DNA of 64,000 nt from Antechinus flavipes (GCF_016432865.1 NC_067398.1:658068001-658132000), one strand, 5' to 3'. Shown: positions 7,395-54,428, counted from the first letter of the stretch. Numbers and translations: made by a program. The notes: generated by a model not told the origin, from the letters alone.

Positions 7395-7960
7395 TACAGG
7401 TTGGGGAAGACTATAAGTTCATCCGAAAAATTACCGTGTGATACGGCAGCCCCAAAGACAAATTCATTCTTAGGCTCCGTAGAGAGAAGTGCAGCTTCTG
7501 GAAGTGAGGTGCCCTGCTGTATAGAGAACATCAGGAGGGCACCATATTTTAGAAATGGAACTGATGAGCTGGGTTGGAGCCAGAGTGGGACTGACATCGT
7601 GGAGGATTCCGTCTAAGAAATGGAGATTTTAACCCCGAAAAGATTCTGGGAGGACAGGACGCCTCTCTTCTAGTATCATAAGGGCTATTTCTAGGGAAAG
7701 GATTAGTCTCGTTCTGTTTAGCTCCCAAAGGGGATCAATGGCTCCAAAGAAAGCGATTAAAGCTTGATATAAAGAAAAGGAAAAACTTCCCAACAGTTAA
7801 GAGATCCTAAAGTGGCAGAAGCGGCTGTGCCGCCTGCTCCTGGACAGAGCAGCTCGCATCGCATCACGGGCTCTTTGGACAGGACTGAAGGGGTCACTTG
7901 TCACAGATTGCGCTGAAAAGAGGGTTGGACCAAGCGCCCCAGAGGTCTCACCAGCTATGA
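7395..7960 (+). mobile_element. L3/CR1 3' relic abutting the copy 1 promoter
   Basis: GTGTGATACGGCAGCCCCAAAG..TTAGGCT, AAGCTTGATATAAAG..AAAAACTTCCCAACAGTTA and GGGTTGGACC..GAGGTC resemble the CR1/L3 3' consensus as recalled. Confidence 0.6.
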
Positions 7961-9350
7961 GATGTGGTTGCTGCTGCTTCGAAAAGGGGGGATGAGATCG
8001 GGAATGAGGAAAGGCTGCAGTTGCCATAGTAACGAGGCCACGAAAGTTACATCCGTGGGGGAAGGGGAGAAAATACAGAATGCGCGTCTGCGCACAGAGC
8101 TACGCGCCCTTTCGCCATGCCCTGGAGGATCAAGGACTACATTTCCCAGGACGCTCTGCGTAGAGCACCTACGTGACGACCAAACAGGGAGGGTGAACGC
8201 CCGGGTCTTTTGGGCGCTGGGAATCTGTAGCTTCATGAATAATTAATGACGCGCGAAGAGCACTCCAAGTTACACCTAGTCTAGGAGGAGGGAGAAAGGG
8301 ACCAAAAAGCCCTTCCAGGCCCGCCCCCAGGCTTGCCTGTAACCCAGGAAAGAGACTGAGCTTTCAGAGAGGGACGAGTTCACAAGTTAGAAAAGGAGAA
8401 GGGACCAAAAAGCCCTTCCAGGCCCGCCCCCAGGCTTGCCTGTAGCCCTGGAGAGGGACTGAGCTTTCAGAGAGGGGCGAGCTAACATCCTCAGAGAAGA
8501 GTTCACAAGTTAGAGAAAGGGAAGGGACGCGGAAGGCAGCCGGCGGTTGTCATGACGACGACGCAGTCACTTCCGGATCCGGCGATGGTTAAATAGCTGG
8601 GACCGGAGCTTCAGTCCCTGTAGTCTAAGCCTGTTTGTTGTGGAGCTGTGCGTCCAGTTGTCGGGAATCTACGGATCTTCATTCAGGCCGTTCACTGCGC
8701 TCCCCGGCACTGGCCATGACGACCTTGGTGAGTGGATGAGACGGCAGCCCGTGAATGTTCAGCCGTGACTGTGTCCGCCCTGGTGTGAGTGGGGGCGTCT
8801 GGGTCCCCGTCCCCCGTGTTTGTGCGTGTGCCAACGGGAGCGGAAGGCAGCAGGGTCCCCGGGTGTGAATGCAGGGGTGTGTGTCTGTACCGGTGATTGG
8901 GAGGCACGGGGTGCCTGGGTGGGGGGACTCGGTGAGTAGCAGCATTCCCCGTGCGCGTGCCAGTGTCTGTTCCTGGGAGCCCGCCTCTGGGGGTGAGGGC
9001 GCGTGCGTGGGGGGGCGCTCTCCGCACAGCATTCGGACAGCCCCTCCCGTGTGCCTGGCTGCTGCCCGCTGGTCCCTGGGGGGCTGGTGCATTCATGCTG
9101 CGGGGGGCGCCTCCCTCCCTGAGAGTGCGAGCAGGTGGATGCGTTCGGGCGCAGGCAGGGGGCTGGGCCCCCGGTCAGTGGCTGGTGTCTGTTGGGCGTG
9201 TGTTACCGTGGGCGGCTTGTCATAGTTGTGGCCCGCTTCTCCGACTCGTGTCTCTCTCTCTGTAGGGGACCAGCAGCCAGACTGTGACCGAATATGTCGT
9301 TCGAGTTCCCAAGTGAGTTCTGCTGGGCCGGGCCGGGCGGGGAAGCTCAG
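7800..9350. promoter_or_regulatory. CpG-rich promoter of GTF2F1 copy 1
   Basis: High CpG density. X-box GTTGCCATAGTAAC 8020-8033, ZNF143-type ACTACATTTCCC 8136-8147, ATGAATAATTAATG 8235-8248, GC boxes within the 8296-8521 repeat, ETS CTTCCGG 8570-8576. Motif calls are from consensus matching only. Confidence 0.8.
8296..8521 (+). repeat. 103-bp tandem duplication in the copy 1 proximal promoter
   Basis: AAGGGACCAAAAAGCCCTTCCAGGCCCGCCCCCAGGCTTGCCTGT...GAGTTCACAAGTTAG begins at 8296 and again at 8399. The second unit carries a ~20-nt insertion. Confidence 0.93.
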
Positions 9351-12300
9351 ATCCCAGCCTCAGCTGGTTTTCTGTTCTACCTGCCTACTTTTCCTGGCCT
9401 GCTGACAATTCTTTTCCCACAGGAACAACCTCAAGAGGTACAATATTATGGCTTTCAATGCAGCTGACAAAGTCAACTTCTCCACCTGGCACCAGGTAAG
9501 TCTGGGATCGCGCCATAGTGATCTAGGAGCCTTAAGGTGGAAGGAATGAAAGCTTTGCGGCTGACTCAGAAAGCGAGGTTTGGTGATTTCCAGGCCCAGG
9601 AGTATGAGGCCTACATGGGTAGAAGAAAGGGCATCTCCCCATTCTTTCAGTTTGCCCAGTATTCGTTAGACACCTATTGTATGCTCAGTCTGTCAGTGAA
9701 CCTAACAAGATAGAAAAGAAACACAAGAAAACGGTTTCCTAATTAAATACTGGACTGCAAAAATAAGTCATAACCCTAAAAGAACACTGAGGGTAAGTTC
9801 TTAGGAAGGGCCGAAGAAGGCAGGGCTGGATCAGAGCCTGGACAGTGGAGGTGAATAGCGTAAGGCTGGACCAGCCAACTCCTGGGGGCTGCGGGAGGTG
9901 AGGCAAGATGTCCCCCCCCCCCCCAGTTCTTGCGGGGGCTCCGAGATGAGTTTGCTTCTCACGTGTCAGGCCAAGATGGAACGGGATCTGAGCAACAAGA
10001 AGATCTATCAGGAGGAAGAGATGCCAGAGTCTGGGGCTGGCAGTGAGTTTAACCGGAAGCTCCGGGATGAGGCCAGGAGGAAGAAGTACGGCATCGTTCT
10101 CAAGGCCTTCAAGGCTGAAGACCAGCCCTGGCTACTCAAAGTCAACGGCAAAACAGGCAGAAGGTGAGCGGGCCTTGGGGAGGCCCCCCCCCCTGGGTCT
10201 GGCCTTTTGTCCTCCTGGGAGGGGAAGCGGGGCTGGAGCATTCTTCCAGCTTTAGGGGATGAGGCCCCGGGGAGCTCCTGGTCTGCCTGAGGCTCTGGCC
10301 CCATCCTGGGCCATGTTCCCAACCCTGTCCGTGCCTTGAGACTCAGCGGGCTGAGAGACCTGGAGGCCCCGGAGGAGTGGCAGGGCCCGGACAGCGAAGA
10401 CATCTTTGTCCTCTTTCCTCTTGCCTGCTGCAGGTTCAAAGGAGTGAAGAAGGGCGGGGTGACAGAAAACACCTCGTACTACATCTTCACCCAGTGCCCC
10501 GACGGGGCCTTCGAAGCCTTCCCCGTGCACAACTGGTACAACTTCACTCCTCTGGCGCGGCACCGGACGCTCACCGCCGAGGAGGCCGAGGAGGAATGGG
10601 AAAGGTGAGTGGGCCGGGATAGCAGGGAGGGCCCACCTCCCATGGGGGCTCAGTCACTGCAGCCTGCGGGGGGTCCCCGGGCTCCAGCTGTGCTCCCCCC
10701 TCAGCCTTTGCGTCAGGCTGCTGTGGTAGCTCTTTATCGAACTTCCTGGGCTGTGTGATGCTCCGTGTGTCCTCTGCCTCCTAGTGGCCCTGGGTCAGAG
10801 AGCTAGTGATGGGGAAAATCCTCTTCTGCCTTTGAGAGCTTGGCCGAGTCCCCTCAGGTCCCGGGCCAGGGGACGTCTGAGTTTGCTCCGGCTCTTCTTC
10901 TGTGATCCGGGGATCCAGGGGAATGTGACAGCAGCGGATCATGGGTAGCTTTCCTAATTCCACGAGGGTTCCTGCCCCTGCTCCTTGGCTTTGGAAGGGC
11001 CTGAGACAGACAGACCCCACAGCCCTCCCAGTGCAAACAAGCCTAAGCGCGGAGGGGAAGGCAGAGAGCTCTGAGTGGGCCTCCTCAGTCAGGGAGGCTT
11101 CCGGGATAGAGGGACTGCCCCTCGTGGCGACCCCACATGATGCACAGCCTTGTTTGCAGGAGGAACAAAGTCCTGAACCACTTCAGCATCATGCAGCAGC
11201 GGCGGCTGAAGGACCAGGACCACGACGAGGATGAGGATGAGCATAAAGAGAAGAAGAGCCGGAAGAAGCCCAGTGAGCTCCGCATCCACGACCTGGAGGA
11301 CGACCTGGAGATGAGCTCTGAGGACAGCAACAGCAGTGGGGAGGAGGGTGAGCATGGGGGGCTGGGGCTGTGCCGGGGGAAAGGCCCCCAGGGATCAGTG
11401 ACCAGGACCTGACCCCGCCCTGCTCTCCCCAGGAGAGAAGGTCCCCAAGAGCAAGAAGAAGGCAGCTGCCTCCAGGGGGGGCAAGAAGAAGAAGAAGAAG
11501 GGCTCTGATGATGAGGCCTTTGAGGACAGCGATGATGGGGACTTTGAGGGCCAGGAGGTGGACTACATGTCAGATGGCTCCAGGTAAGGGACACGGGCTC
11601 CATCCCCTTCCCCCCCCAACCCCTCCCCTTCTTCCTTCCACCACCTGCTCACCTGCAGCCTGTGCTTTCCCCTGCAGCAGCTCTGAGGAGGAGGCAGTAG
11701 GGAAAACCAAGGTGGTCCAGCAGGAGGAGGACGGCCCTAAAGGTAGGTGTGGGCTTGAGGGCAGGACCCATCCCTCCCTTTGTCTTTCCTTGTGCAGAGC
11801 AGGTCGGCCAGTACTGGTTAAACGCGGGCCACTGAGGAGACTTGTGCTGGAGAGAAAAAGGCCCTGCCCTCAAAGGGTTTGTGGGGTGGGGGAGGAATGG
11901 GATAAGCTCTGCTTTCCTTATGTTGAATTGGAAACGCGTGTGGGCAACATCCAGTTGGAAAGAGAAAAAGGCAATTATGCTTAATTAAGAGATCAAAGGT
12001 AACCTTGATGACAGTGGTTGCAAAATGGAGTCCGTTTGCTTCCAAAAGCCAGGCTCCTGTAAGGAGCTGAGGAGGCAGTGGCAGGGGAGGGAGCGCTTTC
12101 CGTGAGGAAGGCTGGGAAGGAGCAGAGAGCCACAGGCCTTTAGCTGCAGAGGATGCTTTAAGCCTGGGCTAAGTCTCGGGGTGCCAGTAGCAGCAGGCAG
12201 GGGCAGGTCGGGGTCCCCGGACCAGGAGAGTGTTCTGGCTTCCCCTCAGGCATTGATGAGGAAAGTGAAAGCAGTGAGGAGAGTGAGGAGGAGAAGCCCC

Positions 12301-14376
12301 CCGAGGAGGAGGAGAAGGAGGAAGAAGATAAGAAGGTCCCCAACCCGCAGGAGAAGAAGAGGAGGAAAGGTGAGCTTGATGGCCGGAGGAGGAGCCGGCC
12401 CGGCGTTCGAGGCCTTCACGCTGCCTCTGCGCAGCCGGGTCCCCAGGGTCCCCAGATGCCCTCTTGGCTGACGGTTCCCTGGCCCTCCCTTCAGGCGCCC
12501 CCACTCCCCGCTCCTCTTGTGCTTAGTGCTAATCCTCTCCCTGGCCCCTAAGCTGCTGGGGGAAATGCACCAGGAAGCCCCAGAAGCCCCCAGGACTCCC
12601 CAAAAGCTCTCCTTACCCCCAAAACCTCTCGGACTCCCCCAATTTCCCTGCCTCCCCCAGCTCCCCTCCTTGGAGCCCCAGGTCCCCTCCTTGGAGCCCC
12701 AGCTCCCCTCCCTGCCTCCTCTGGCCTGGCCCAGCTTTCCCTGCCAGGGCAGCCCACAGTTAAGGCCGCTTCTTGGGCTGGGTTCTGTACCTGCCAGTAC
12801 CCGCCACCAGGCCAGCTCCCTGAGGGCAGAGTCCGGGCGAGATGCCCCTTTGCCCGCCCCGGGACTCTGGGGGGCGGGCCGGGGCTCAGGCTCCCTTTTG
12901 CCCCTCAGGAGACAGCAGCGAGGAGTCGGACACCTCCGAGGAGAGCGACATCGACAACGAGGCGTCCTCGGCCCTCTTCATGACCGTGAGTATGGCCCGG
13001 GGGGAGCCCCGGCGGGCTCGTCTTTGCCTTTCCCCGGCTCAGTCTCCCTTACCCCTTTCTGCAGAAGAAGAAGACTCCCCCCAAGAGGGAGCGGAAGGCC
13101 TCGGGCAGCAGCTCCAGGGGCAACAGCCGCCCGAGCACTCCCAGCGTGGACAGCGGCAGCACGTCCTCCACCCTGCGGGCAGCCGCCAGCAAGCTGGAGC
13201 AAGGTGAGGCGGGCCCCGGCCTCCCCCGCTCCCCCATGAGCCCGTGTCCCCCAGGGGCCAGGAGCGGGCCCCCGTCTCTCCCTCCCCTTTTCGGGCACTT
13301 TCCCAGCTTCTCTTTGGGAGGTTCTGTTGGCCCCTCTGAGGCCAGACAAGCTCATTTTGGGGGTACAGGGGCAGGGGCCCAGACCTGGGAGGGGAGAGCG
13401 CCCCCCTCTGCCACTGCAGTGTGTTGTTGAGTCCTGGGACCCACTTTGTGCGCACAGTGACAAGGGGGACGGCCCCGAGGAAGGTGGCCGGGATGGCATG
13501 GGCCTTGGAAGCAAAGTCCAGGGAGGCCAGGCCCGCGCTTGAGCCCCCGTCCTCTGGCTCAGAGAGAGGGGCCAGGGAGGCCTTTGGAGGCTCCTGAAGG
13601 AGGGGCTCCTGCTCAGGTGTAGAGAAGCCTGAGCTCTGAGAGACCCCTCCAGCTCTGACCTGGGGTTTGACGTTTCCATGCAGGGAAGCGGCAGACGGGA
13701 CCCAGTGATACGCCCGCCGCCAAGCGCCTGAGGCTGGATGCCGGGCCCCAGAGCATCTCGGGGAAATCCACGCCCCAGCCTCAGTCCGGCAAGTCCACGC
13801 CCAGCAGTGGGTGAGTAAGGGGCCATTTGGGGGAGGTTGGGGGAACTGGGCAGCAGCAGGTGAGTAAGGGGCCATTTGGGGGAGGTTGGGGGAGCTGGGC
13901 AGCAGTGGGTGAGTAAGGGGCCATTTGGGGGGGTTGGGGGAGCTGGGCAGCAGTGGGTGAGTAAGGGGCCATTTGGGGGAGGTTGGGGGAGCTGGGCAGC
14001 AGTGGGTGAATAAGGGGCCATTTGGGGGGTTTGGGGCCGGGCTGGGCAGCAGCGGGCAAGGGGCCACTTCTAGGACCTGGAGCTGGCCTGGACAGTAATG
14101 AGTAAGGGGCCGTTTCTGGGATCTGGGCAACAGAACCTCCGCCCCCTGACCCCCGGCCTTTCTCCCTCCAGTGATGTGCAGGTGACAGAGGACGCGGTCA
14201 GGCGCTACCTGACCCGAAAGCCCATGACCACCAAGGACCTGCTGAAGAAGTTCCAGACCAAGAAGACGGGGCTCAGCAGCGACCAGACAGTCAACGTGCT
14301 GGCCCAGATCTTGAAGCGCCTCAACCCGGAGCGCAAGATGATCAATGACAAGATGCACTTCTCCCTCAAGGAGTGA
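8716..14376 (+). CDS. GTF2F1: General transcription factor IIF subunit 1 (RAP74), upstream copy 1, intact, 522 aa
   Basis: 13 GT-AG exons: 8716-8727, 9266-9312, 9423-9495, 9970-10163, 10434-10604, 11160-11347, 11433-11583, 11678-11742, 12250-12369, 12909-12985, 13065-13203, 13684-13810, 14172-14376. Total 1569 nt with consistent phases. Reads MTTLGTSSQTVTEYVVRVPKNNLKRYNIMAFNAADKVNF...FQCPDGAFEAFPVHNWYNFTP...DVQVTEDAVRRYLTRKPMTTKDLLKKF...KMHFSLKE*. AATAAA at 14402-14407. Confidence 0.96.
12655..12711 (+). repeat. 21-bp tandem repeat in GTF2F1 copy 1 intron 9
   Basis: CCCCAG(C/G)TCCCCTCCTTGGAG repeated about 2.7 times. Copy 2 has only one unit. Confidence 0.85.
13802..14046 (+). repeat. ~49-bp G-rich minisatellite spanning the exon 12 donor, 5 units (copy 1)
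   Basis: Unit CAGCAGTGG|GTGAGTAAGGGGCCATTTGGGGGAGGTTGGGGGAGCTGGG starts at 13802, 13851, 13900, 13948 and 13997. Degenerate units follow. Confidence 0.95.
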
Positions 14377-15381
14377 GCGGCCGCCGGGACACAGCAGGGC
14401 CAATAAAAGCTGCTTGGCCTTTTTCTCGGGCTCTGTGTGACTTTGTGGGGGGGAGGATTGTGGGTTTGGGAGCCGGTGTCCCGAGAGAACGTCGGGGGCA
14501 GCTCCCCGACTACAGGTGGGGAAACTGAGGCCCAGAGAAGCAAAGGGACTGGTCCGGGCTGTTAGGCCCTGCCCCCCTTCCTCATCCCCGCAGGACTGCC
14601 TTCCACCAAGGGATTTGGTCTGGAATCCAGGTGTGGAAACTTCCCTTCCTGCAGCGTCCCCTCCCCACGCCGCACTTGGCGGCTGCCGGGAATGTCTGGC
14701 ACGTCAGGCTAATTCTTGGGAAATGTCTGGCGTTCCCAGGAGGAGACTCCTGTTCCCCATCTCCTCACCCCCACCTTGGAGGGGAACATCCAAGAGGAAA
14801 CAGCTCATCTGCACCCCCGGCTCGCTTCTCGCCCTCCCCCCCTCCTAAACACAGGCCCGGCTTTCAGGGACTGGGGTCTGACAGCTTGGTTCTCTGCCTA
14901 GCAACAGGGGCTGAAGGGGATCCCCAGCCTCACTCTGCCCTCTCCCCCGGACCGTTGTGGAAGAACACCAAGTTCCCTGGCCTAATAATCTGTGGCTCAG
15001 TGAAGGGAAAATGTGGCCTCTGGTGGGGTGTTTCCTGTTTTGATGTTGGAGCAGGCAGGCCGGAGACAGGGGCATGATGCCTTAATCCCTCCTGCTCAAG
15101 TTGGAGCCCGGAACCTAGGAAGGGCGGAGGAGGGATTGCCCAGCATCTGTTGCACGTGTGCTCTTTCTCCCCGCTTACCCCTGCCCCCCACTTTCCCCAG
15201 GGATTTGCTTTGAATAATCTGTCCCATGGAGAAAACTTCTTCCCCTCTTTCTCTCCCAGCCATTACTGGTGCTCTGGGAGTGCATAAATGACGGTTAAGT
15301 TGACGGTGGTGATTGGGGGAAAAGCATGGCTAGAATCTCCCAACCTGTCATCTCTTGCCCTATTTTCAGGAAGGAGGGGAT

Positions 15382-15625
15382 GGCCAGGCAAGGGCCTCTG
15401 TTCTGGGTCAGCCATCCAGCAGTGACCAGCCTGTCGAAACAGATAAAAGATGTAAAGGATGGAGCCCCCATCCTCTAGTTTTCATGCGATCTACAGGTTA
15501 TTATGGACACGCCTTCTGCTCACCCTCCCTCTGATCCTGTCTGGGTCTTAGGTAGCTGCTTTCTCTCCGTAAAACTCTGGGTCCACATCTGGGAAACTGC
15601 CTTTAGCTCCTGGAATTCTAGAGCA
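15382..15625 (+). pseudogene. PSPN: Decayed PSPN 5' flank and exon 1 relic downstream of GTF2F1 copy 1
   Basis: Colinear blocks shared with true PSPN. GGCCAGGCAAGGGCCTCTGTTCTGGGTCAGCCATCCAGCAGTGACCAGC (15382-15430) matches GGCAAGGCAAGAGTTAATGTTCTGGGCCGCCCACCCAGCTCTGACTAGC (53438-53486). ATG 15503 corresponds to 53568. CCACATCTGGGAAACTG (15583-15599) matches CCACATCTGGGGAACTG (53674-53690). The frame reads MDTPSAHPSL*. No exon 2 relic was found. Confidence 0.8.
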
Positions 15626-18519
15626 CCATCTCCAACCCAAAGGAACGAGAAGCTGTGCTTTTAAACATTCCTCAGCTGCAGTCCAGAATTGTCACTGGAC
15701 ACATGGGTTTTCCCTCGTTGCCCTTGTTATGTACACTTGTACCCAGGGCTACTCATAGGAGGCTTTGAGTTCTTTAAGGAAGAATCTTACTACCTGTCAC
15801 CTACCAGAAAGAGCTGCTCCTCTTTGGGCGTCTCCACTCTCCTGCAGGGCTGTTTGGCTGCTACTCATAAGCAACTGAAACAGTGTGAAATTCTCTTAAT
15901 GAAAGCAGAAAGCCTCAAGTGCACTTTATTGCTAGACACTGTCAGCTCCTTCAACAAAAGCAGTTCCCTTAAACGTAGTTTAAACAGCCATTCACATCAG
16001 TGCTCTCCCCTTGGCTCAGAGGGGTTTCCCAGATCTGAAGCTGCCTGCAAATTGCAGTAAAAAGTCAACGCTTGTTTAAGCCTTTCCTTGTTCTACTAGC
16101 CTTTCAAAGTGAAAGAAGGGTCCTCTCTTCTCTAATCAGCTTTCAAAAAGCAGAGCCTCCAATCAGCTCAGCTCCCAGCAGCAAGGTAGACCATCCAGGT
16201 GAGAGCCACTCAATGATAAGGAGATGCTCCTAAATGAAACTAGACCCCCTCCTCCTTTCTGTTCTTCCCCCTTCCCTCTCCATTCTCCTCTCCTCTTCTG
16301 TGACCCCGCTTTCCTCAAAGCAGGATTTCTTGGTGTGATGTGACCCCTCTACCATAAATGTGCATAAAATGCACATTTCTGTCCGACTTGCCAGAGACCC
16401 AAAGTTACTAAATGGTCCTAATTATTAGGGTATCCAAGGTGAATTGCTAGGGAACAACACTTGGACTATCTTTATCTTCAGTAATTCCCTTTTCCATGAG
16501 TGGATGCTTTCTCTCAGATCTCAAGCTTGCCTGTGTTTCTGTTTCAGTACTGAGAGGCTGCTTTTCTCAGTGTTTCTCCTACAAATGTCCTTTTTTTCCG
16601 CATCCCTTTCAGGAAATAATGTCCAAATAAGAAAGGCACCACCTTATAGTATGGTACAGGAGTTAGGATGGGGAACATTTAGGATACAAATACTCACCCA
16701 ATAAATATGTATTTAATACAAGTTTTCCATCATTTTAGACCTTTTGTGCTTTTTTCATCACCTGGCATTCATGGACACTAATTCCCCCAAAGACACTGAA
16801 TTCTTAGTCATTCTCCTTATACCTCCTCCCATAAATCCTGGTTTTTAGGAGTGAGTCTGCTTCCTGCTGCTGTTCCACATGTTCCCTCTGCTTTTTATCA
16901 GTCAGGATCTTCTTTGGTGGATCCAGATCTTATCACTAAATCTATAGCTGGATCTACTGGCCTCCTAGGAAGTCATCCTAGTTTAGTACCTGTCTCAACT
17001 CCTGTCCTTATACTAAGGGAACTTCAGCATTCAAGTTGATAATCCATCAAAAAACCTAATTTCCCAGTTCTTGCATCCACTCATTTCCCATGACCCACTC
17101 CTTCAATCTGCCTCAGCTAGGTAGAGGGATGGTGAGACCTTTATTTTCACTAACTTTTACCTGAAATGTAGCATTTCCTTCAGTTATTTAAAAACATTAC
17201 TCTGGAAAAAAAAGAAGCTGTAGGCTTTGCCAGACTGCCAAAGAAACCCATAACAACACACATGCTATTGAAGACAAAACATTTGGCCACTGAAACTTAG
17301 ATTCAGCACAAATTTAAACTGTTTTATTTTTTAATTTGATATTATCTTTCTGTAGGTTTAGATCACATAGGCAGTGAAAATGTTGGATCTTCAATACCTT
17401 TATAGACCTTTCAAAATTCCCAAGATTAGAAATTAAACTTCTCTTACCAGATACCATGAGCAGAGTCACAGAAATCCCACAAAAGCAAATGAAACAAAGG
17501 AACCATAGTTAGAAATTGATAAATCATTTTGAATGTCTCCACAGCCAATCAAAATTAGGTCTGAGACTGCCCCCTTAGAGATACTTCCTCTTCTCTAGTG
17601 TTCCCAGCTGAGGAAGCAGGTGCTGATGAATTCCCATCCACCCCCACCCATATTTAATCAAGAAATCCCTTTCTGTTTATTGTAGTCAGAAACTTACTGT
17701 CTGCTGGGGTTGCCATGTCTGTACTAGGCAGCTCCTACCCTTATTCACTCTTCTTTTAACTCTCCCTCTTATGTGTGTAAGTCTTCTTTAATGTTTTAAG
17801 TTATTTTAGTGGACTAGCCTTGCTTATCTGATTATTCCAAGAGCATTGGAGATGGAAGAAAAAAGTGATCTTAAAAATATATATATATTTCATTATATAC
17901 AATTAATAAAATACATAATATTTTATTAATTGTATATAATATATTATGTTAATATATAATATTTATTATTCTATTTTATTATATATAAGAATCTTCTTTG
18001 GTGGATTCAGATCTTATCACTAAATTTATAGATGATACATAATATATATTTTATATAATTATATTATAAAAATATATTACAAATACATATTTATTATGTT
18101 ATATATATGTTATTTCAGTAAATTTTATTATAAATATATATTTATTAGTTATATATGTTATTTTAGTGGACTAGCTTCCTTATGTGATTATTCCAAGAGC
18201 ATTGGAGATGAGAGAAAAACTGATCTTAATATATATATATAAAAATAAACATTGAGCATTCAGCATTCAGCTAAATGTAGAGACTGATCTTGGGCTGTCA
18301 TCAACACAGCAGTCAAACAATGGGCTCTGCCTGGAAACTCACCAACTTTGTAGGACTGGCTTTGACTTCATTTTACACTGGCCCAAGGTTATAAGAGGAA
18401 AAAATAAAGACCAAAATAGATGATTTATAATCTATTACACGAAACCATAAATTCTCTCTAGACCTTATTCCTTATTTAGAAACAATAAATATTCTTTAGA
18501 CTTATTATTCCTTTATGAG

Positions 18520-22039: not shown

Positions 22040-22980
22040 TTCTCCAATTGATAGTCAAAGGTTATGAATAGACAATTTTCAGATGAAAAAATTAAAACCA
22101 TTTCTAGTTATATGAAAAAATGTTCTAAGTCATTATTGATCAGAGAAATGCAAATTAAGACAATTCTGAGGTATCACTACACACCTCTCAGATTGGCTAA
22201 GATGACAGGAAAAAGTAATGATGAATGTTGGAGAGGATGCGGGAAAACTGGGACACTGATACATTGTTGGTGGAGTTGTGAATGGATTCAGCCATTCTGG
22301 AGAGAAATTTGGAATTATGCCTAAAGGGTTACCAAACTCTGCATACCCTTTGATCCAGCAGTGTCTCTACTAGGTCTATCCCATCATAAAAAGAGAAAAG
22401 AACTCACATGTGCAAAAATATTTGTAGCAGCTCTTTTTGTAGTGGTAAGGAACTAGAAACTGAATGGATGCTCATCATGGAGAATGGCTGAATAAATTAT
22501 GGCATTTGAATGCATATTATTCTATAAGAAATGATCAGCAGAATGATTTCAGAGAACGAAGTGAGTAGAACCAAAAGAACGTTGTACACAGCAACAAGAT
22601 GATGTGATGGTCACATCACAGTCTATCAGATGACCATCACAGATGACCATAATCTGTGATAGACTTGGTTCTTTTCAACAGTGAGGTGATGGAGAGAACC
22701 ACCTGTATCCAGAGAGAAGACCATGGGTCTTAAATGTGGATCACAACATAATATATTCACCTTTTTTGTTGTTTGCTTGATTTTTATTTTCTTTCTCATT
22801 TTTTCCCTTTTTGATCTGATTTTTCTTGTGTAGCATGGTAATTATGTAAATGTGTAGAATTACATGCATTTAATCCCCTAGGAGAGGGGAAAGGAAGGAA
22901 GAAAAATATGGCACACAAGATTTTGCAAGGGTGAATGTTAAAAGCTATCTTTGCATATATTTTGAAAATAAAAAGATTTT
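22040..22980 (+). mobile_element. L1 ORF2 C-terminus plus 3' UTR
   Basis: ORF 22064-22324 MNRQFSDEKIKTISSYMKKCSKSLLIREMQIKTILRYHYTPLRLAKM..CWRGCGKTGTLIHCWW. A-rich tail near 22975. Confidence 0.92.
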
Positions 22981-45849: not shown

Positions 45850-47500
45850 CAAGCTAAGGAGATTCGGCCTTCCCTCCTCAGTCACGCTGGGACCCATCTC
45901 CCCGAACCCGCTGCAGTTTTAACACGCGGGAACAGTATAATACGGCAGCCCAAAAGCTCGCGGAATCCGAGGCTGCAGAGAGACGCCCCCCGGAGGAGAC
46001 TGTCTTGCGGCACACAGCAAACCGGGTGTGCTTGCGCTTGCGCTTGGGCCGGGGAGCGCAGTTAGAGAGGAGCGGGAGGCGACCCGCGGAACCACCACGG
46101 AGGAGCTGGACTGGCTGCCTTTCAGTCTTTTGGAAGCAGGATAGCCCTGGGTCGTTTAGCGCCACGGGGGATAAACAGGTGGCAGCGTCAGTGAGGCAAA
46201 TTAAAGCTTGCTATAAAAGAAAAGTTCCTGACCGAGCTGTACAAAAGTAGCATGGCAGCTCCTCCCACGGGGGGAGTTTCTGAGCAGCGGCTGGATGGGC
46301 ACTTTCACAGGTTGTGCCGCAGAGAGGGTTGGACCAGAGCCCCTAAGGTCCGCACCAGCTCCAAAGAGGTGGATGCTGCTGTTTGCAGGAAGGGGGAAGG
46401 GAGAGGAAGCCTAGAGTGCAGTTGCCATGGCCTCGCAGTTGCCGTGACAACTCAACGAGAGAAACTGCAGGGAGAGTGCGCCTGCGCACAGGGCTCGGGC
46501 TCTCTTCCCCATGTCCGGGAGATTCAAGAACTACGAATCCCGAGATGCGCCACTACAACGAAAATCCTGCGAATGCCCACAGATAGTTCTACAAGATAAC
46601 GACACAGGAAATGCCTGGGTCAGTCCAGCGCCTCATGAATAATTAATGAAGCACGATTGACTCCTTTCCCAAGACCGAGGATGGGAAAGAGACCCATTCC
46701 GCCTCCGCAGCGCCCACACCCAGGCTTGTCTACGTTGTGGGGAAGGGGCTGCGCCTTCTGGAGACATATTTGCACAAACCTGGAAGCTTGCAATGGCTCG
46801 CCGCTTGGATCGGGTTTGATCCACTCCCGTAAGGCCGTCAACGGTTGTCAAGACGACGACGCGGAAAGTTTAGTTTCCGGGTCAAGCCGCGGCGCTTGCT
46901 GGGACTCCAAGTTTACAGTGGTGGCTCTTCCTTGTTTGAGGTAGGGACCTGGCCGGCGTCTTCGGGGTTCGGAGGGAGATTAGGAGCGGAGTGCGCGACG
47001 ATTTTTGACCCTCCACGCGGTCACGCAGCGGGCCCAACTTTGGACAAGATGACGAGTTTGGTGAGTGGGTGGGAGCGGCGTGCGTGGGACCCCCTCCGTC
47101 CCCGGCCCCTGTCCCGTGGGGGTAGTGACTCGTGACCACTAGCTCACGAGCTCGCTTGTATTAGGCGCCCGCTGTGTGCTGTACACGACGCTAAGCCCTG
47201 CTAATGCAAAGCAAATCGGAGGCCATCCGCCCTCCAGATCTCCTTGTCCGCGCGGATGCCCCCGTTGGTGCGCTGCAGTTGCGGGCCCGGGAGTCAGCCT
47301 TCCTGGGCGCGGCTGTGCCCGTCCCAGACGCTCCTTTCGGACCATGGGCAGCCTTGCATTTTAAAGGGGCGCACTTCTCCGACTCGTGTCTCTCTCTCTG
47401 TAGGGGACCAGCAGTCAGACTGTGACTGAATATGTCGTTCGAGTTCCCAAGTGAGTTCTGCTGGGGATGGGGAGCGGGGGGTGGGGGGACGGCTCAGATC
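45850..47500. promoter_or_regulatory. CpG-rich, probably bidirectional promoter (GTF2F1 copy 2 rightward, AK1-like leftward)
   Basis: CpG-rich. X-box GTTGCCGTGACAAC 46438-46451, NRF1 TGCGCCTGCGCA 46477-46488, ACTACGAATCCC 46530-46541, ATGAATAATTAATG 46635-46648, TTTCCGG 46874-46880. Use for the leftward gene is inferred. Confidence 0.75.
45930..46365 (+). mobile_element. L3/CR1 3' relic at the equivalent position in the copy 2 promoter
   Basis: CAGTATAATACGGCAGCCCAAAAG..GAGGCTGCA, ATTAAAGCTTGCTATA and GAGGGTTGGACC..AAGGTC are colinear with 7430-7960. Confidence 0.6.
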
Positions 47501-50500
47501 CCAGCCCCGGCTTCCGTCCTGTTTCTTGCCTTTCCTGGCCTGCTAACAATTCTCTTCCTACAGAAACAACCTCAAGAGGTACAATATTATGGCTTTCAAT
47601 GCAGCTGACAAAGTCAACTTCTCCACCTGGCACCAGGTAAGTCTGGGATTCTGGCACAGTCTAGAAGCCTTAAGGTAAATGGAAAGGAGACTCGAACCCA
47701 CAGCTAGGAGCGGGGGTTGGTGAGCTTCTGAGCTCAGGGGGGTGAGGTCTGCACGGGCAGAGGAGAGGGCGTCTCACTTTTGTCAGTCCCTCAGCGACAT
47801 ATTCAATTGCAATTTTTGCTCAGGTTGTCATTTGAAATACAAGAGAAACATAAGAGGAAAAAAATCTCTCCTCAGCACCAAATAAGGTAACTAAGTAAGT
47901 GTTAGGCTAGAAAGCTCAGACAGGACTGTAGATCATGGAGGCCATTGTATAGGAAAGGCAGCCTGAAGAAGGCAGGGCTGGATCAGAGCCTGGACAGTGG
48001 AGGTGAATAGCGTAAGGCTGGACCAGCCAACTCCTGGGGGCTGCGGGAGGTGAGGCAAGATGTCCCCCCAGTTCTTGCGGGGGCTCCGAGATGAGTTTGC
48101 TTCTCACGTGTCAGGCCAAGATGGAACGGGATCTGAGCAACAAGAAGATCTATCAGGAGGAAGAGATGCCAGAGTCTGGGGCTGGCAGTGAGTTTAACCG
48201 GAAGCTCCGGGATGAGGCCAGGAGGAAGAAGTACGGCATCGTTCTCAAGGCCTTCAAGGCTGAAGACCAGCCCTGGCTACTCAAAGTCAACGGCAAAACA
48301 GGCAGAAGGTGAGCGGGCCTTGGGGAGGCCCCTCCCCCCCGGGTCTGGCCTTTTGTCCTCCTGGGAGGGGAAGCGGGGCTGGAGCATTCTTCCAGCTTTA
48401 GGGGATGAGGCCCCGGGGAGCTCCTGGTCTGCCTGAGGCTCTGGCCCCATCCTGGGCCATGTTCCCAACCCTGTCAGTGCCTTGAGACTCAGCGGGCTGA
48501 GAGACCTGGAGGCCCCAGAGGAGTGGCAGGGCCCGGACAGCGAAGACATCTTTGTCCTCTTTCCTCTTGCCTGCTGCAGGTTCAAGGGAGTGAAGAAGGG
48601 CGGGGTGACAGAAAACACCTCGTACTACATCTTCACCCAGTGCCCCGACGGGGCCTTCGAAGCCTTCCCCGTGCACAACTGGTACAACTTCACTCCTCTG
48701 GCGCGGCACCGGACGCTCACCGCCGAGGAGGCCGAGGAGGAATGGGAAAGGTGAGTGGGCCGGGATAGCAGGGAGGGCCCACCTCCCATGGGGGCTCAGT
48801 CACTGCAGCCTGCGGGGGGTCCCCGGGCTCCAGCTGCGCTCCCCCCTCAGCCTTTGCGTCAGGCTGCTGTGGTAGCTCTTTATTGAACTTCCTGGGCCGT
48901 GTGATGCTCCGTGTGTCCTCTGCCTCCTAGTGGCCCTGGGTCAGAGAGCTTCTGCCTTTGAGAGCTTGGCCGAGTCCCCTCAGGTCCCGGGCCAGGGGAC
49001 GTCTGAGTTTGCTCCGGCTCTTCTTCTGTGATCCGGGGATCCAGGGGAATGTGACAGCAGCGGATCATGGGTAGCTTTCCTAATTCCACGAGGGTTCCTG
49101 CCCCTGCTCCTTGGCTTTGGAAGGGCCTGAGACAGACAGACCCCACAGCCCTCCCAGTGCAAACAAGCCTAAGCGCGGAGGGAAAGGCAGAGAGCTCTGA
49201 GTGGGCCTCCTCAGTCAGGGAGGCTTCCTGGATAGAGGGACTGCCCCTCGTGGCGACCCCACATGATGCACAGCCTTGTTTGCAGGAGGAACAAAGTCCT
49301 GAACCACTTCAGCATCATGCAGCAGCGGCGGCTGAAGGACCAGGACCACGACGAGGATGAGGATGAGCATAAAGAGAAGAAGAGCCGGAAGAAGCCCAGT
49401 GAGCTCCGCATCCACGACCTGGAGGACGACCTGGAGATGAGCTCTGAGGACAGCAACAGCAGTGGGGAGGAGGGTGAGCATGGGGGGCTGGGGCTGTGCC
49501 GGGGGAAAGGCCCCCAGGGATCAGTGACCAGGACCTGACCCCGCCCTGCTCTCCCCAGGAGAGAAGGTCCCCAAGAGCAAGAAGAAGGCGGCTGCCTCCA
49601 GGGGGGGCAAGAAGAAGAAGAAGAAGGGCTCTGATGATGAGGCCTTTGAGGACAGCGATGATGGGGACTTTGAGGGCCAGGAGGTGGACTACATGTCAGA
49701 TGGCTCCAGGTAAGGGACACGGGCTCCATCCCCTCCCCCCCCCCCAACCCCTCCCCTTCTTCCTTCCACCACCTGCTCACCTGCAGCCTGTGCTTTCCCC
49801 TGCAGCAGCTCTGAGGAGGAGGCAGTAGGGAAAACCAAGGTGGTCCAGCAGGAGGAGGACGGCCCTAAAGGTAGGTGTGGGCTTGAGGGCAGGACCCATC
49901 CCTCCCTTTGTCTTTCCTTGTGCAGAGCAGGTCGGCCAGTACTGGTTAAACGCGGGCCACTGAGGAGACTTGTGCTGGAGAGAAAAAGGCCCTGCCCTCA
50001 AAGGGTTTGTGGGGTGGGGGAGGAATGGGATAAGCTCTGCTTTCCTTATGTTGAATTGGAAACGCGTGTGGGCAACATCCAGTTGGAAAGAGAAAAAGGC
50101 AATTATGCTTAATTAAGAGATCAATGGTAACCTTGATGACAGTGGTTGCAAAATGGAGTTCGTTTGCTTCCAAAAGCCAGGCTCCTGTAAGGAGCTGAGG
50201 AGGCAGTGGCAGGGGAGGGAGCGCTTTCCGTGAGGAAGGCTGGGAAGGAGCAGAGAGCCACAGGCCTTTAGCTGCAGAGGATGCTTTAAGCCTGGGCTAA
50301 GTCTCGGGGTGCCAGTAGCAGCAGGCAGGGGCAGGTCGGGGTCCCCGGACCAGGAGAGTGTTCTGGCTTCCCCTCAGGCATTGATGAGGAAAGTGAAAGC
50401 AGTGAGGAGAGTGAGGAGGAGAAGCCCCCCGAGGAGGAGGAGAAGGAGGAAGAAGATAAGAAGGTCCCCAACCCGCAGGAGAAGAAGAGGAGGAAAGGTG

Positions 50501-52307
50501 AGCTTGATGGCCGGAGGAGGAGCCGGCCCGGCGTTCGAGGCCTTCACGCTGCCTCTGCGCAGCCGGGTCCCCAGGGTCCCCAGATGCCCTCTTGGCTGAC
50601 GGTTCCCTGGCCCTCCCTTCAGGCGCCCCCACTCCCCGTTCCCCTTGTGCTTAGTGCTAATCCTCTCCCTGGCCCCTAAGCTATTGGGGGAAATGCGCTC
50701 GGAGGCCCCAGAAGCCCCCAGGACTCCCCAAAAGCTCTCCTCCTTACCCCCCAAAACCTCTCGGACTCCCCCAACTTCCCTGCCTCCCCCAGGTCCCCTC
50801 CCTGCCTCCTCTGGCCTGGCCCAGCTTTCCCTGCCGGGGCAGCCCACAGTTAAGGCCGCTTCTTGGGCTGGGTTCTGTACCTGCCAGTACCCGCCACCAG
50901 GCCAGCTCCCTGAGGGCAGAGTCCGGGCGAGATGCCCCTTTGCCCGCCCCGGGACTGAGGGAGCCGGGACTCTGGGGGGCGGGCCGGGGCTCAGGCTCCC
51001 TTTTGCCCCTCAGGAGACAGCAGCGAGGAGTCGGACACCTCCGAGGAGAGCGACATCGACAACGAGGCGTCCTCGGCCCTCTTCATGACCGTGAGTATGG
51101 CCCGGGGGGAGCCCCGGCGGGCTCGTCTTTGCCCTTCCCCGGCTCAGTCTCCCTTACCCCTTTCTGCAGAAGAAGAAGACCCCCCCCAAGAGGGAGCGGA
51201 AGGCCTCGGGCAGCAGCTCCAGGGGCAACAGCCGCCCGAGCACTCCCAGCGTGGACAGCGGCAGCACGTCCTCCACCCTGCGGGCAGCCGCCAGCAAGCT
51301 GGAGCAAGGTGAGGCGGGCCCCGGCCTCCCCCGCTCCCCCATGAGCCCGTGTCCCCCAGGGGCCCGCTCCTGGCCCCTGTCTCTCCCTCCCCTTTTCGGG
51401 CACTTTCCCAGCTTCTTTTTGGGAGGTTCTGTTGGCCCCTCTGAGGCCAGACAAGCTCATTTTGGGGGTACAGGGGCAGGGGCCCAGACCTGGGAGGGGA
51501 GAGCGCCCCCCTCTGCCACTGCAGTGTGTTGTTGAGTCCTGGGGCCCACTTTGTGCGCACAGTGACAAGGGGAACGGCCCCGAGGAAGCAAAGTCCAGGG
51601 AGGCCAGGCCCGCGGTTGAGCCCCCGTCCTCTGGCTCAGAGAGAGGGGCCGGGGAGGCCTTTGGAGGCTCCTGAAGGAGGGGCTCCTGCTCAGGTGTAGA
51701 GAAGCCTGAGCTCTGAGAGACCCCTCCAGCTCTGACCTGGGGTTTGACGTTTCCATGCAGGGAAGCGGCAGACGGGACCCAGTGATACGCCCGCCGCCAA
51801 GCGCCTGAGGCTGGATGCCGGGCCCCAGAGCATCTCGGGGAAATCCACGCCACAGCCTCAGTCCGGCAAGTCCACGCCCAGCAGTGGGTGAGTAAGGGGC
51901 CATTTGGGGGGGTTGGGGGAGCTGGGCAGCAGTGGGTGAGTAAGGGGCCATTTGGGGGGTTTTGGGGCCGGGCTGGGCAGCAGCGGGCAAGGGGCCACTT
52001 CTAGGACCTGGAGCTGGCCTGGACAGTAATGAGTAAGGGGCCGTTTCTGGGATCTGGGCAGCAGAACCTCCGCCCCCTGACCCCCGGCCTTTCTCCCTCC
52101 AGTGATGTGCAGGTGACAGAGGACGCGGTCAGGCGCTACCTGACCCGAAAGCCCATGACCACCAAGGACCTGCTGAAGAAGTTCCAGACCAAGAAGACAG
52201 GGCTCAGCAGCGACCAGACAGTCAACGTGCTGGCCCAGATCTTGAAGCGCCTCAACCCGGAGCGCAAGATGATCAATGACAAGATGCACTTCTCCCTCAA
52301 GGAGTGA
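47049..52307 (+). CDS. GTF2F1: General transcription factor IIF subunit 1 (RAP74), copy 2 in the ancestral position next to PSPN, intact, 522 aa
   Basis: Exons 47049-47060, 47404-47450, 47564-47636, 48115-48308, 48580-48750, 49286-49473, 49559-49709, 49806-49870, 50378-50497, 51014-51090, 51170-51308, 51761-51887, 52103-52307. Exon lengths match copy 1. Starts MTSL. AATAAA at 52333-52338. Confidence 0.97.
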
Positions 52308-53089
52308 GCGGCCGCCGGGACACAGCAGGGCCAATAAAAGCTGCTTGGCCTTTTCTCGGGCTCTGTGTGACTTTGTGGGGGGGAGGATTGTGGGTTTGGG
52401 AGCCGGTGTCCCGAGAGAACGTCGGGGGCAGCTCCCCGACTACAGGTGGGGAAACTGAGGCCCAGAGAAGCAAAGGGACTGGTCCGGGCTGTCAGGCCCT
52501 GCCCCCCTTCCTCATCCCCGCAGGACTGCCTTCCACCAAGGGATTTGGTCTGGAATCCAGGTGTGGAAACTTCCCTTCCTGCAGCGTCCCCTCCCCACGC
52601 CGCACTTGGCGGCTGCCGGGAATGTCTGGCACGTCAGGCTAATTCTTGGGAAATGTCTGGCGTTCCCAGGAGGAGACTCCTGTTCCCATCTCCTCACCCC
52701 CACCTTGGAGGGGAACATCCAAGAGGAAACAGCTCGTCTGCACCCCCGGCTCACTTCTCGCCCTCCCCCACTCCTAAACACAGGCCCGGCTTTCAGGGAC
52801 TGGGGTCTGACAGCTTGGTTCTCTGCCTAGCAACAGGGGCTGAAGGGGATCCCCAGCCTCACTCTGCCCTTTCCCCCGGACCGTTGTGGAAGAACACCAA
52901 GTTCCCTGGCCTAATAATCTGTGGCTCAGTGAAGGGAAAATGTGGCCTCTGGTGGGGTGTTTCCTGTTTTGATGTTGGAGCAGGCAGGCCGGAGACAGGG
53001 GCATGATGCCTTAATCCCTCCTGCTCAAGTTGGAGCCCGGAACCTAGGAAGGGCGGAGGAGGGATTGCCCAGCATCTGTTGCACATGTG
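47965..53089 (+). repeat. Near-identical segmental repeat, copy B
   Basis: Direct repeat of 9813-15160, with a start offset of 38152 nt. Confidence 0.95.
51879..51977 (+). repeat. Same minisatellite with 2 units (copy 2)
   Basis: Donor GT at 51888 (native) and at 51936. Confidence 0.93.
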
Positions 53090-53567
53090 GCAGTCCTCAG
53101 TGTCCCCCTACCATTGGTTATTCTGCCTTTCCCTCCAGCTCTGCTTGAGAGATCAGAGATGGGTCAACAATGTGCACTTCGGCCCTCCTGACTGGGGCAA
53201 GTCTTACCCTAAATTTGGGGCATTGAGATGCGATCACCTCCAGCCCAGGCTGGAGAAACTATTATAAAAGTATTGGAAAAAAGCTTCTGGAATGATGGAG
53301 GGAGCAACTTTTTCCCTAAATGGTCCACAGGTGTAGCTTTCACTCTTCTCTTCCAATGCTGAACACCCAACAGGGTGTTATAAACATTAGGGATTCAGTG
53401 GTAGGCATGATGGGTAAGGCTCAAGGCACAGGAGTGGGGCAAGGCAAGAGTTAATGTTCTGGGCCGCCCACCCAGCTCTGACTAGCTCCTCCTGCTGGGG
53501 GTCGGGGAGATATAGTGGCGTGCATGGAACCCTTCAGTCTCTAGCTCTCCTACATCCTCAGCTCAGC

Positions 53568-54428
53568 ATGGCTTGGGCACCAGCCTTCCTCACTCTTTTG
53601 CTTCTGCTGCCTCCTAGTCTGGGGGAACTGCCTTCTGTCCCCAGAACTCCAGGGCTACCTCTGGAAGAGAAGCCCACATCTGGGGAACTGAGTCCGGTTC
53701 CTGGAGCGTCATACCTCAGACTTGGAAAGCTGCCTCCGACCTCCGGGATCAAGAGGCCATGGCTAGGTAAAGGATTCCACAGCAGGATAGGTAAAAGGCT
53801 GTTGGTGTGTTCTCCAAGTTAGGACTTCTCAAACTTTGTCCTTGAAACCCCTTTTGCACTTCCCCGTGTTTATTGGTACATCTGATAGGTATACAAGTCA
53901 AACATTTACCGTTAAATTGTAACTTTTTGACCCTCACTTTGTTAATGACCCTATCCTGATCATTTTAAGAATTTTAAGCAGCTTTGCTCTTAGGAGAGGA
54001 TGCAAGATCTTCGTTCTCCAGAAGAGGTCTCCTGTTTACACTTGTGATCACCTATACCTAATGAGTTGCTCTTTTCTTTTCTTCTAGGGGACCACCTATT
54101 GCCATCTGCTTCAAGAGCCCGGGTATCCAGGGACCTGTCTAGCTCCGCCACTGAATGTCAGCTGCAGAGCCTGCTCCTGCCAGTGACCGAGTTGGGCCTC
54201 GGCTACAACTCGGATGAGACCATTGCCTTCCGCTACTGTGCGGGCAGCTGCCACAGTCTTTATACCCACCATGGCCTGACACTGGCCAGGCTTTCAGCCG
54301 AGGGCCGGGTGACGAGCCAGCCCTGCTGCCACCCCACCCGATATGAGGATGTGGCCTTCCTGGACAACCACCACCACTGGCATCACCTGCCCCAGCTGTC
54401 TGCTGCCGCCTGTGGCTGTGGGATCTGA
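53568..54428 (+). CDS. PSPN: Persephin (GDNF-family ligand) precursor, 179 aa
   Basis: Exons 53568-53766 and 54088-54428 with a phase-1 intron. Signal peptide MAWAPAFLTLLLLL, RVSR cleavage site, and seven-Cys knot CQLQSL..LGLGY..FRYCAGSC..PCCHPTRY..LPQLSAAACGC. AATAAA at 54685-54690. Confidence 0.95.

What the first reader, a model, noticed from the sequence alone, without database searches (positions are those of the whole stretch)
9813..15160. Sharp-edged gene-conversion tract inside an old duplication
Identity between copies jumps abruptly. Upstream of 9813/47965, intron 3 aligns only loosely (roughly 70% by eye) and intron 1 barely aligns (538 vs 343 nt). Downstream of 15160/53089 only the decayed PSPN relic aligns. 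Between these points even introns are near-identical. One duplication event cannot give both ages, so the simplest model is an ancient duplication plus recent or ongoing ectopic conversion of exons 4-13 that spares the promoters. A 30-nt identical stretch at the end of intron 1 and near-identical exons 2-3 may be an older, smaller tract.
Basis: partly seen in the sequence, partly recalled or inferred. Interest (0 to 1): 0.8.

Follow-up and report, generated by a model that had tools for sequence, protein, structure and literature searches.

The report
Marsupial twin TFIIF genes kept identical
This marsupial has two neighbouring copies of a core transcription gene (GTF2F1) that were duplicated at least about 60 million years ago, and repeated copying of one onto the other keeps their bodies almost identical; it is a clean new example of a well-known process.

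Summary
The window comes from Antechinus flavipes. It holds two intact tandem GTF2F1 genes (TFIIF alpha/RAP74), 38 kb apart, whose 522-aa proteins differ at one residue. From 9813/47965 to 15160/53089 the copies differ at 49 of 5103 aligned bases, introns and about 740 nt beyond the poly(A) signal included. Just outside the 5' edge they differ at 43% of sites, and just outside the 3' edge they no longer align.

Sminthopsis and Dromiciops have the same two loci with orthologous flanks. Inside the tract, paralogues pair within each species (100/100 support). In the intron 3 flank, Antechinus B pairs with Dromiciops B (100/99; the AU test rejects an A+B pairing, p=3.5e-6).

The 3' edge sits at the same nucleotide in all three species. 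The 5' edge differs by lineage. Indels specific to one lineage are shared by both of its copies. In seven marsupial species the two proteins differ at 0-4 of 478 residues within a species, against 1-21 between species.

Best explanation: an ancient duplication followed by recurrent interlocus gene conversion, limited by old blocks of non-homology.

I found no paper describing this. It is a new member of a known kind.

The parts
8716..14376 (+). GTF2F1 copy A (annotated 'GTF2F1-like', XP_051827716.1). 13 coding exons, ATG to stop, protein 522 aa starting MTTL.
   Evidence: Gene model with canonical AG/GT at every junction. The protein is identical to P0282.
47049..52307 (+). GTF2F1 copy B (annotated 'GTF2F1', XP_051827715.1), at the ancestral position upstream of PSPN, ALKBH7 and CLPP. 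Protein 522 aa starting MTSL.
   Evidence: Downstream ORFs for PSPN, ALKBH7 and CLPP. The same gene order is annotated in Sminthopsis, Sarcophilus, Monodelphis, Notamacropus and Dromiciops.
9813..15160 (+). Conversion tract, copy A side: distal intron 3 through exon 13 plus 784 nt beyond the stop codon.
   Evidence: 49 substitutions in 5103 aligned bases and 12 indels against copy B. Edges read base by base. Paralogues pair within species in the tree.
47965..53089 (+). Conversion tract, copy B side.
   Evidence: Same as for the copy A side.
9496..9812 (+). Unconverted A-type part of intron 3. It is orthologous to Dromiciops A, and to the sequence now carried by both Sminthopsis copies and by Sarcophilus B.
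   Evidence: Alignment, distances and tree.
47637..47964 (+). Unconverted B-type part of intron 3, orthologous to Dromiciops B.
   Evidence: AntB-DroB p-distance is 0.30, against 0.43 for AntB-AntA. AntB+DroB has 100/99 support.
9236..9495 (+). Older 5' homology block of copy A: the last 30 nt of intron 1, exon 2, intron 2 and exon 3. Its partner in copy B is 47374-47636. In Sminthopsis the current tract begins at the start of this block.
   Evidence: p-distance 0.108 between the Antechinus copies. The Sminthopsis tract runs L001:10407-17187 against L002:10235-17007.
15310..15676 (+). Decayed relic of the PSPN 5' region behind copy A. It shows that the ancient duplication reached beyond the 3' edge of the tract.
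   Evidence: nhmmer with a four-species B-type profile gives E=1.3e-20 here and E=3.6e-33 in Dromiciops A. No hit in 90 shuffled flanks.
53568..54428 (+). Intact PSPN behind copy B (two exons, TGF-beta type cystine knot).
   Evidence: ORFs. The orthologous genes carry PF00019 in Sminthopsis, Sarcophilus and Dromiciops.
7892..8140 (+). Weak relic of ancient homology between the two promoter regions. The partner in copy B is 46297-46534, at 67.8% identity.
   Evidence: blastn. The same relic appears between Dromiciops A and B, and between AntB and DroA.
11876..11877 (+). Junction of a deletion of about 0.7 kb in intron 8 that both Antechinus copies share (B side 50004/50005). Sminthopsis, Sarcophilus and Dromiciops keep the sequence.
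14402..14407 (+). AATAAA 26 nt after the stop codon (copy B: 52333). If it is the signal in use, about 740 nt of the tract lie beyond the transcript.
   Evidence: Pattern scan. Whether this signal is used was not tested.

Best explanation
An ancestor of living marsupials duplicated, in tandem, a segment of about 8 kb or more. The segment held the GTF2F1 promoter, all 13 exons and the start of PSPN. This happened before the split between Dromiciops and the dasyurids, and probably before crown marsupials.

Since then the gene body has been overwritten again and again by non-reciprocal copying between the two loci. This is interlocus gene conversion: a DNA break in one copy is repaired with the paralogue 38 kb away as template.

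In Antechinus the last homogenisation covered 9813-15160 / 47965-53089. It is old enough for about 47 new mutations to have built up on both copies.

Conversion stops where the partners no longer match. At the 3' end this is an ancient block of non-homology, placed identically in three genera. At the 5' end it is the long-diverged part of intron 3. Promoters, exon 1 and intron 1 escape and have diverged almost beyond alignment. The result is one protein expressed from two different control regions.

Shown: the duplication age relative to speciation, the tree switch at the edge, the shared edges, and the lineage-specific indels shared by both paralogues.

Inferred: the molecular repair pathway, whether there was one long event or several, and any selective reason.
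For: 1. Identity of 99% extends through introns and 784 nt past the stop codon.

2. The flanks of copy A are orthologous between Antechinus, Sminthopsis and Dromiciops, and so are the flanks of copy B. Cross-copy alignments stop exactly at the tract edges.

3. Tract tree: (AntA,AntB), (SmiA,SmiB) and (DroA,DroB) each have 100/100 support.

4. Flank tree: (AntB,DroB) has 100/99 support, and the AU test rejects AntA+AntB at p=3.5e-6.

5. The three lineages differ in paralogue divergence: 0.06% in Dromiciops, 0.68% in Sminthopsis and 0.96% in Antechinus. They also differ in the 5' end point. This points to independent, repeated events.

6. An intron 8 deletion is shared by both Antechinus copies only. 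A transposable-element insertion is shared by both Sminthopsis copies only.

7. The differences between the Antechinus copies are derived on both copies (A 27, B 20) and spread evenly along the tract.

8. In 7 species the two proteins differ at 0-4 of 478 residues in exons 4-13 within a species, against 1-21 between species.

9. The PSPN relic shows that old homology continues beyond the 3' edge.
Against: No read-level check of the assembly was possible.

DNA of both copies was available for only three species, plus Sarcophilus B. The American marsupials are covered only by annotation and protein sequences.

The direction of conversion is inferred only for the intron 3 segment, where it runs A to B in Sminthopsis and Sarcophilus.

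A GC-biased-conversion signature is only suggestive. GC is 0.61-0.62 inside the tract against 0.45-0.51 just outside. However, the post-conversion substitutions are mostly G/C to A/T.

No expression data were obtained for either copy.
Confidence: 0.9

Rival explanations
1. Assembly artefact. The tract of one copy was filled in or polished with reads of the other, so the true copies are more different than they appear.
For: Nearly identical 5-6 kb repeats are hard to assemble. The Dromiciops copies differ at only 4 of 6381 bases.
Against: The Antechinus copies differ by 49 substitutions and 12 indels, spread along the whole tract and derived on both copies. The same architecture, with the same 3' edge, appears in three independent assemblies of three genera. 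Two nearly identical proteins are annotated in seven species.
Confidence: 0.03
2. Repeated unequal crossing-over, or a later second partial duplication that replaced the 3' part of one gene, rather than gene conversion in the strict sense.
For: The copies are direct tandem repeats 38 kb apart, which is a substrate for unequal exchange. Tracts of 5-6.5 kb are long for a single conversion event.
Against: A single unequal crossover homogenises everything on one side of the exchange point. Here both sides of the tract keep copy-specific, orthologous flanks in all three species. The 19-kb spacer with the adenylate kinase gene is not duplicated. A double exchange confined to the block cannot be told apart from conversion.
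Confidence: 0.06
3. Purifying selection alone keeps the two old copies alike, with no sequence exchange.
For: TFIIF alpha is highly conserved. All 5 exonic differences within the tract are silent.
Against: Introns and sequence beyond the poly(A) signal are as similar as the exons (99%). The same introns differ by 8-20% between species. Lineage-specific indels are shared by both paralogues.
Confidence: 0.01

Closest known systems
Primate alpha-globin (HBA1/HBA2) and gamma-globin (HBG1/HBG2) tandem duplicates, the classical cases of concerted evolution by gene conversion
   Same: Old tandem duplicates a few kb long. Coding sequence and introns are kept nearly identical within each species. Conversion is confined to homology blocks bounded by non-homologous segments. 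Flanks and regulatory regions diverge.
   Different: Here the gene is a general RNA polymerase II transcription factor subunit. Only one gene was seen for platypus and the listed placentals. The tract is longer (5.3-6.8 kb). One edge is placed identically in lineages separated by roughly 60 My. The two copies have entirely different promoters and first introns.
Duplicated ribosomal protein genes of fungi evolving in concert (PMC6993855; title and start of abstract only)
   Same: A housekeeping gene that dosage balance usually holds at single copy is kept as two copies that evolve in concert, in parallel in several lineages.
   Different: Different kingdom and different gene class. Here introns and intergenic DNA are homogenised too, so the template is DNA. 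I did not read that paper's proposed mechanism.
Tandem HMA4 paralogues of Arabidopsis halleri, with mosaic divergence under interlocus gene conversion (bioRxiv 10.1101/2025.10.29.685298; title and start of abstract only)
   Same: Tandem paralogues in which conversion gives a mosaic of homogenised and diverged segments.
   Different: That duplication is recent and under positive selection for dosage. This one is ancient and conserved across an entire mammalian infraclass.

Membership tests
Concerted evolution by interlocus gene conversion | Within the tract, paralogues of one species are closer to each other than to their orthologues | tested here: met
   ML tree of the tract, 7 sequences and 5541 columns. 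AntA+AntB, SmiA+SmiB and DroA+DroB each have 100/100 support. Distances are under 1% within species and 8-20% between species.
Concerted evolution by interlocus gene conversion | The duplication predates the speciations: flanks are orthologous by copy | tested here: met
   Flank alignments AntA-SmiA-DroA and AntB-SmiB-SarB-DroB. Intron 3 flank tree has AntB+DroB at 100/99, and the AU test gives p=3.5e-6 against AntA+AntB. The same gene order is annotated in Monodelphis and Notamacropus.
Concerted evolution by interlocus gene conversion | The similarity is not explained by selection: it covers non-coding DNA equally | tested here: met
   Of the 49 tract differences, 38 are in introns, 6 lie 3' of the stop codon and 5 are in exons. 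Overall identity is 99%. About 740 nt lie past AATAAA.
Concerted evolution by interlocus gene conversion | The tract lies inside a longer region of older homology, so it is a replaced segment and not the end of the duplicated unit | tested here: met
   Exons 1-3 and a promoter relic lie upstream. The PSPN relic lies downstream at E=1.3e-20.
Concerted evolution by interlocus gene conversion | Lineage-specific changes are copied to both paralogues | tested here: met
   An intron 8 deletion is found in both Antechinus copies. A transposable-element insertion is found in both Sminthopsis copies, 99.7% identical.
Concerted evolution by interlocus gene conversion | Both copies and their junctions exist in the raw data of the individual | not testable with these tools
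GC-biased gene conversion | GC is raised in the converted domain and fixed changes show an excess of A/T to G/C | tested here: inconclusive
   GC is 0.61-0.62 just inside both edges and 0.45-0.51 just outside. The changes since the last homogenisation run 29 from G/C to A/T against 15 from A/T to G/C. No comparison with single-copy orthologues was made.

The most novel reading that the evidence does not exclude
Marsupials have kept a stable 'one protein, two promoters' arrangement for the large subunit of TFIIF for 60-80 million years. The two genes would be retained because their unrelated control regions split expression, for example between germline or early embryo and soma. Recurrent conversion, favoured by selection, would then hold the protein identical so that both fit the same TFIIF beta and polymerase partners. 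Dasyurids also carry several intact intronless GTF2F1 retrocopies. On this reading the basal transcription machinery would be more diversified in marsupials than in placental mammals.
Probability: 0.3. Interest if true: 0.6.

Novelty: new member of a known kind. Interest (0 to 1): 0.45.

Why it matters
GTF2F1 encodes a core part of the RNA polymerase II initiation machinery, and only one gene was seen for platypus and the listed placentals. This locus shows that marsupials carry two intact copies. It also gives an unusually clean natural record of how gene conversion works over tens of millions of years:

- one edge is fixed to the nucleotide in three genera;
- the other edge moves between lineages;
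- the gene tree switches from grouping by species to grouping by copy within a few bases.

There are practical consequences. Gene trees or dating based on the coding sequence of these paralogues will wrongly suggest recent, independent duplications in every marsupial. Read mapping and variant calling in exons 4-13 will be ambiguous.

It also raises a testable question about whether the two promoters divide expression between them.

Tried and rejected
Later look-ups used protein ids of other species only, and the rest was local scripting.

- The look-up of encoding contigs gave no DNA for Monodelphis, Notamacropus, Petaurus or Gracilinanus ('file too large'). P0281 was not on record. The Sarcophilus copy A was not among the cluster members listed, so only Sarcophilus B was used.

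- Rfam found nothing in the window.

- A fuzzy regex search timed out and was replaced by blastn.

- tblastn with the PSPN protein found only marginal matches behind copy A. The nucleotide profile search settled the question.

- I considered whether the 3' edge was simply the end of the original duplication. I rejected this because of the PSPN relic.

- I considered that AntB intron 3 was a fast-evolving or replaced sequence. I rejected this because it is orthologous to Dromiciops B.

Full report
**What is in the window.** The window holds two complete GTF2F1 genes (TFIIF alpha, RAP74) on the + strand.

- Copy A runs from 8716 to 14376 and copy B from 47049 to 52307.
- Each has 13 coding exons with canonical splice sites.
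- The 522-aa proteins differ only at residue 3, T against S.
- They match exactly two annotated Antechinus flavipes proteins: A is XP_051827716.1 'GTF2F1-like' and B is XP_051827715.1 'GTF2F1'. This fixes the species. An earlier scan note (s1-204720) had pointed to it.
- Copy B is followed by an intact PSPN, then ALKBH7 and CLPP on the minus strand. This is the gene order seen behind the one GTF2F1 copy that keeps these neighbours in the other marsupials examined.
- Copy A lies 38 kb upstream. AT-rich repeat DNA and an adenylate kinase gene separate the two.

- A global alignment of the two loci and base-by-base reading of the edges show a jump from near-random similarity to 100% at 9813/47965, and a fall at 15160/53089.
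- Inside the tract there are 49 substitutions in 5103 aligned bases (0.96%) and 12 indels. None of the substitutions falls in the first 380 nt.
- Of the 49 substitutions, 38 are in introns, 6 lie 3' of the stop codon and 5 are in exons. All 5 exonic ones are silent.
- An AATAAA sits 26 nt after the stop codon, so about 740 nt of the tract probably lie beyond the transcript.
- Outside the 5' edge the copies differ at 43% of sites in A9641-9812 and at 36% in A9496-9640.
- Introns 1 are 538 and 343 nt long and barely align.
- The exon 2 to exon 3 block, including the last 30 nt of intron 1, stands at 10.8%.

**The duplication is old, and longer than the tract.**

- Weak promoter homology survives: 7892-8140 against 46297-46534, at 68% identity.
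- Both first exons have the same four-codon structure.
- A nucleotide profile built from the PSPN 5' region of four B-type loci hits the DNA behind copy A at 15310-15676 (E=1.3e-20). It hits Dromiciops copy A more strongly (E=3.6e-33). Ninety shuffled flanks gave no hit.

**Other marsupials.**

- Protein searches found pairs of GTF2F1 genes in Sminthopsis, Notamacropus, Petaurus, Dromiciops, Monodelphis and Gracilinanus. They found at least one gene in Sarcophilus, Macrotis and Vombatus. For platypus and the listed placentals only one gene was seen.
- I obtained genomic DNA for both Sminthopsis copies (L001, L002), Sarcophilus B (L003) and both Dromiciops copies (L004, L005).
- For Monodelphis, Notamacropus, Petaurus and Gracilinanus only the gene neighbourhoods came back. 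They show the same layout: one copy sits between the adenylate kinase gene and PSPN-ALKBH7-CLPP, and the other stands alone.
- The flanks of copy A are orthologous between Antechinus, Sminthopsis (80-90% identity) and Dromiciops (67-76%). The flanks of copy B are likewise orthologous. Alignments between an A copy and a B copy of different species stop exactly at the tract edges.

- Tract tree (7 sequences, 5541 columns): AntA+AntB, SmiA+SmiB and DroA+DroB each have 100/100 support.
- Tree of the 172 nt just 5' of the Antechinus edge: AntB groups with DroB (100/99). AntA groups with DroA, both Sminthopsis copies and Sarcophilus B.
- The AU test rejects an AntA+AntB clade there (p=3.5e-6).
- So the tree switches from by-copy to by-species within a few bases. 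This is the signature of gene conversion after an ancient duplication.
- Dromiciops and the dasyurids separated roughly 60 My ago (my own knowledge of marsupial dates, approximate).
- Copy A carries Pro at residue 23 in Monodelphis, Gracilinanus, Notamacropus and Petaurus. This hints that the duplication predates crown marsupials, but it is a single site.

**Conversion is recurrent, and the edges are old.**

- Paralogue divergence inside the tract is 0.06% in Dromiciops (4 of 6381), 0.68% in Sminthopsis (46 of 6770) and 0.96% in Antechinus.
- The 3' edge is at the same orthologous nucleotide in all three genera. Beyond it, A-type and B-type sequences are each conserved across species but do not align with each other for 150-470 nt, until the PSPN relic begins. 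This looks like an ancient indel that blocks heteroduplex extension.
- The 5' edge differs by lineage:
  - Antechinus: 9813.
  - Dromiciops: about 100 nt further downstream.
  - Sminthopsis: 30 nt upstream of exon 2.
  - Sarcophilus B: A-type sequence through intron 3.
- In Sminthopsis and Sarcophilus, conversion therefore crossed the diverged intron 3 segment in the A to B direction.
- Both Antechinus copies share a deletion of about 0.7 kb in intron 8. Both Sminthopsis copies share a transposable-element insertion in the same intron. One-off events were thus copied to the partner.
- At the protein level, exons 4-13 differ at 0-1 of 478 residues between paralogues within a species (4 for the Dromiciops pair compared, whose '-like' partner P0297 lies on another chromosome). 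Between species they differ at 1-21.

**The last event in Antechinus.**

- The differences between the copies are derived on both, 27 on A and 20 on B when polarised with the other species.
- They are mostly G/C to A/T changes.
- They are spread evenly along the tract (KS p=0.10, chi-square p=0.34).
- This fits one long homogenisation followed by ordinary mutation. A steady state of many overlapping events cannot be excluded.
- From the tree's branch lengths and assumed dasyurid divergence dates I put the last event at roughly 2-4 My ago. This is an inference, not a measurement.

**Rivals.**

- An assembly artefact is unlikely. The many phased differences, and the same architecture in three independent assemblies, argue against it.
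- Simple unequal crossing-over does not fit, because copy-specific flanks survive on both sides of the tract.
- Selection alone cannot explain identical introns and shared indels.

**Novelty.**

- Full-text searches found no paper on a marsupial GTF2F1 duplication or on its conversion.
- The process itself is textbook: globin genes, fungal ribosomal protein genes (PMC6993855) and HMA4 tandem paralogues.
- I file this as a new member of a known kind. It is of moderate interest for its age, its nucleotide-exact edge, and because the gene is a core transcription factor.

Noticed in passing
L006:10001-11560 (A. flavipes chromosome CM028217.1, about 419.2 Mb): An intact intronless GTF2F1 copy of 519 aa (P0229), which looks like a retrocopy with an open frame. 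At least six 'GTF2F1-like' proteins of this diverged type are annotated in A. flavipes on two chromosomes, and similar ones exist in Sarcophilus and Vombatus.
   Followed up: partly
window 34826-40408, minus strand: An adenylate kinase family gene (PF00406) lies between the two GTF2F1 copies. It is annotated in the same place in Sminthopsis, Sarcophilus, Monodelphis, Notamacropus and Dromiciops. An earlier scan note (s1-204786) flagged it.
   Followed up: no
window 13802-14046 against 51878-51960 (intron 12): A minisatellite that starts at the exon 12 donor is 146 nt longer in copy A (indels of 98 and 48 nt). These are the largest length differences inside the tract. It was noted earlier as s1-204790.
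   Followed up: no
L001:12922-14186 and L002:12751-14010 (Sminthopsis intron 8): The second half of this extra intron segment matches dispersed repeats in the window (for example 22285-22553 and 44664-44951). It is therefore a transposable-element insertion now present in both paralogues.
   Followed up: partly
Dromiciops protein P0297 (XP_043855640.1), on a different chromosome from L004/L005: A third full-length GTF2F1-like gene in Dromiciops. It differs from the tandem pair at 4 of 479 residues in exons 4-13. Its structure and origin were not examined.
   Followed up: no
window 53094-53420: The roughly 300 nt just beyond the 3' edge of copy B are strongly conserved among Antechinus, Sminthopsis, Sarcophilus and Dromiciops B loci and have no counterpart behind copy A. 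They may be a PSPN upstream control element.
   Followed up: no
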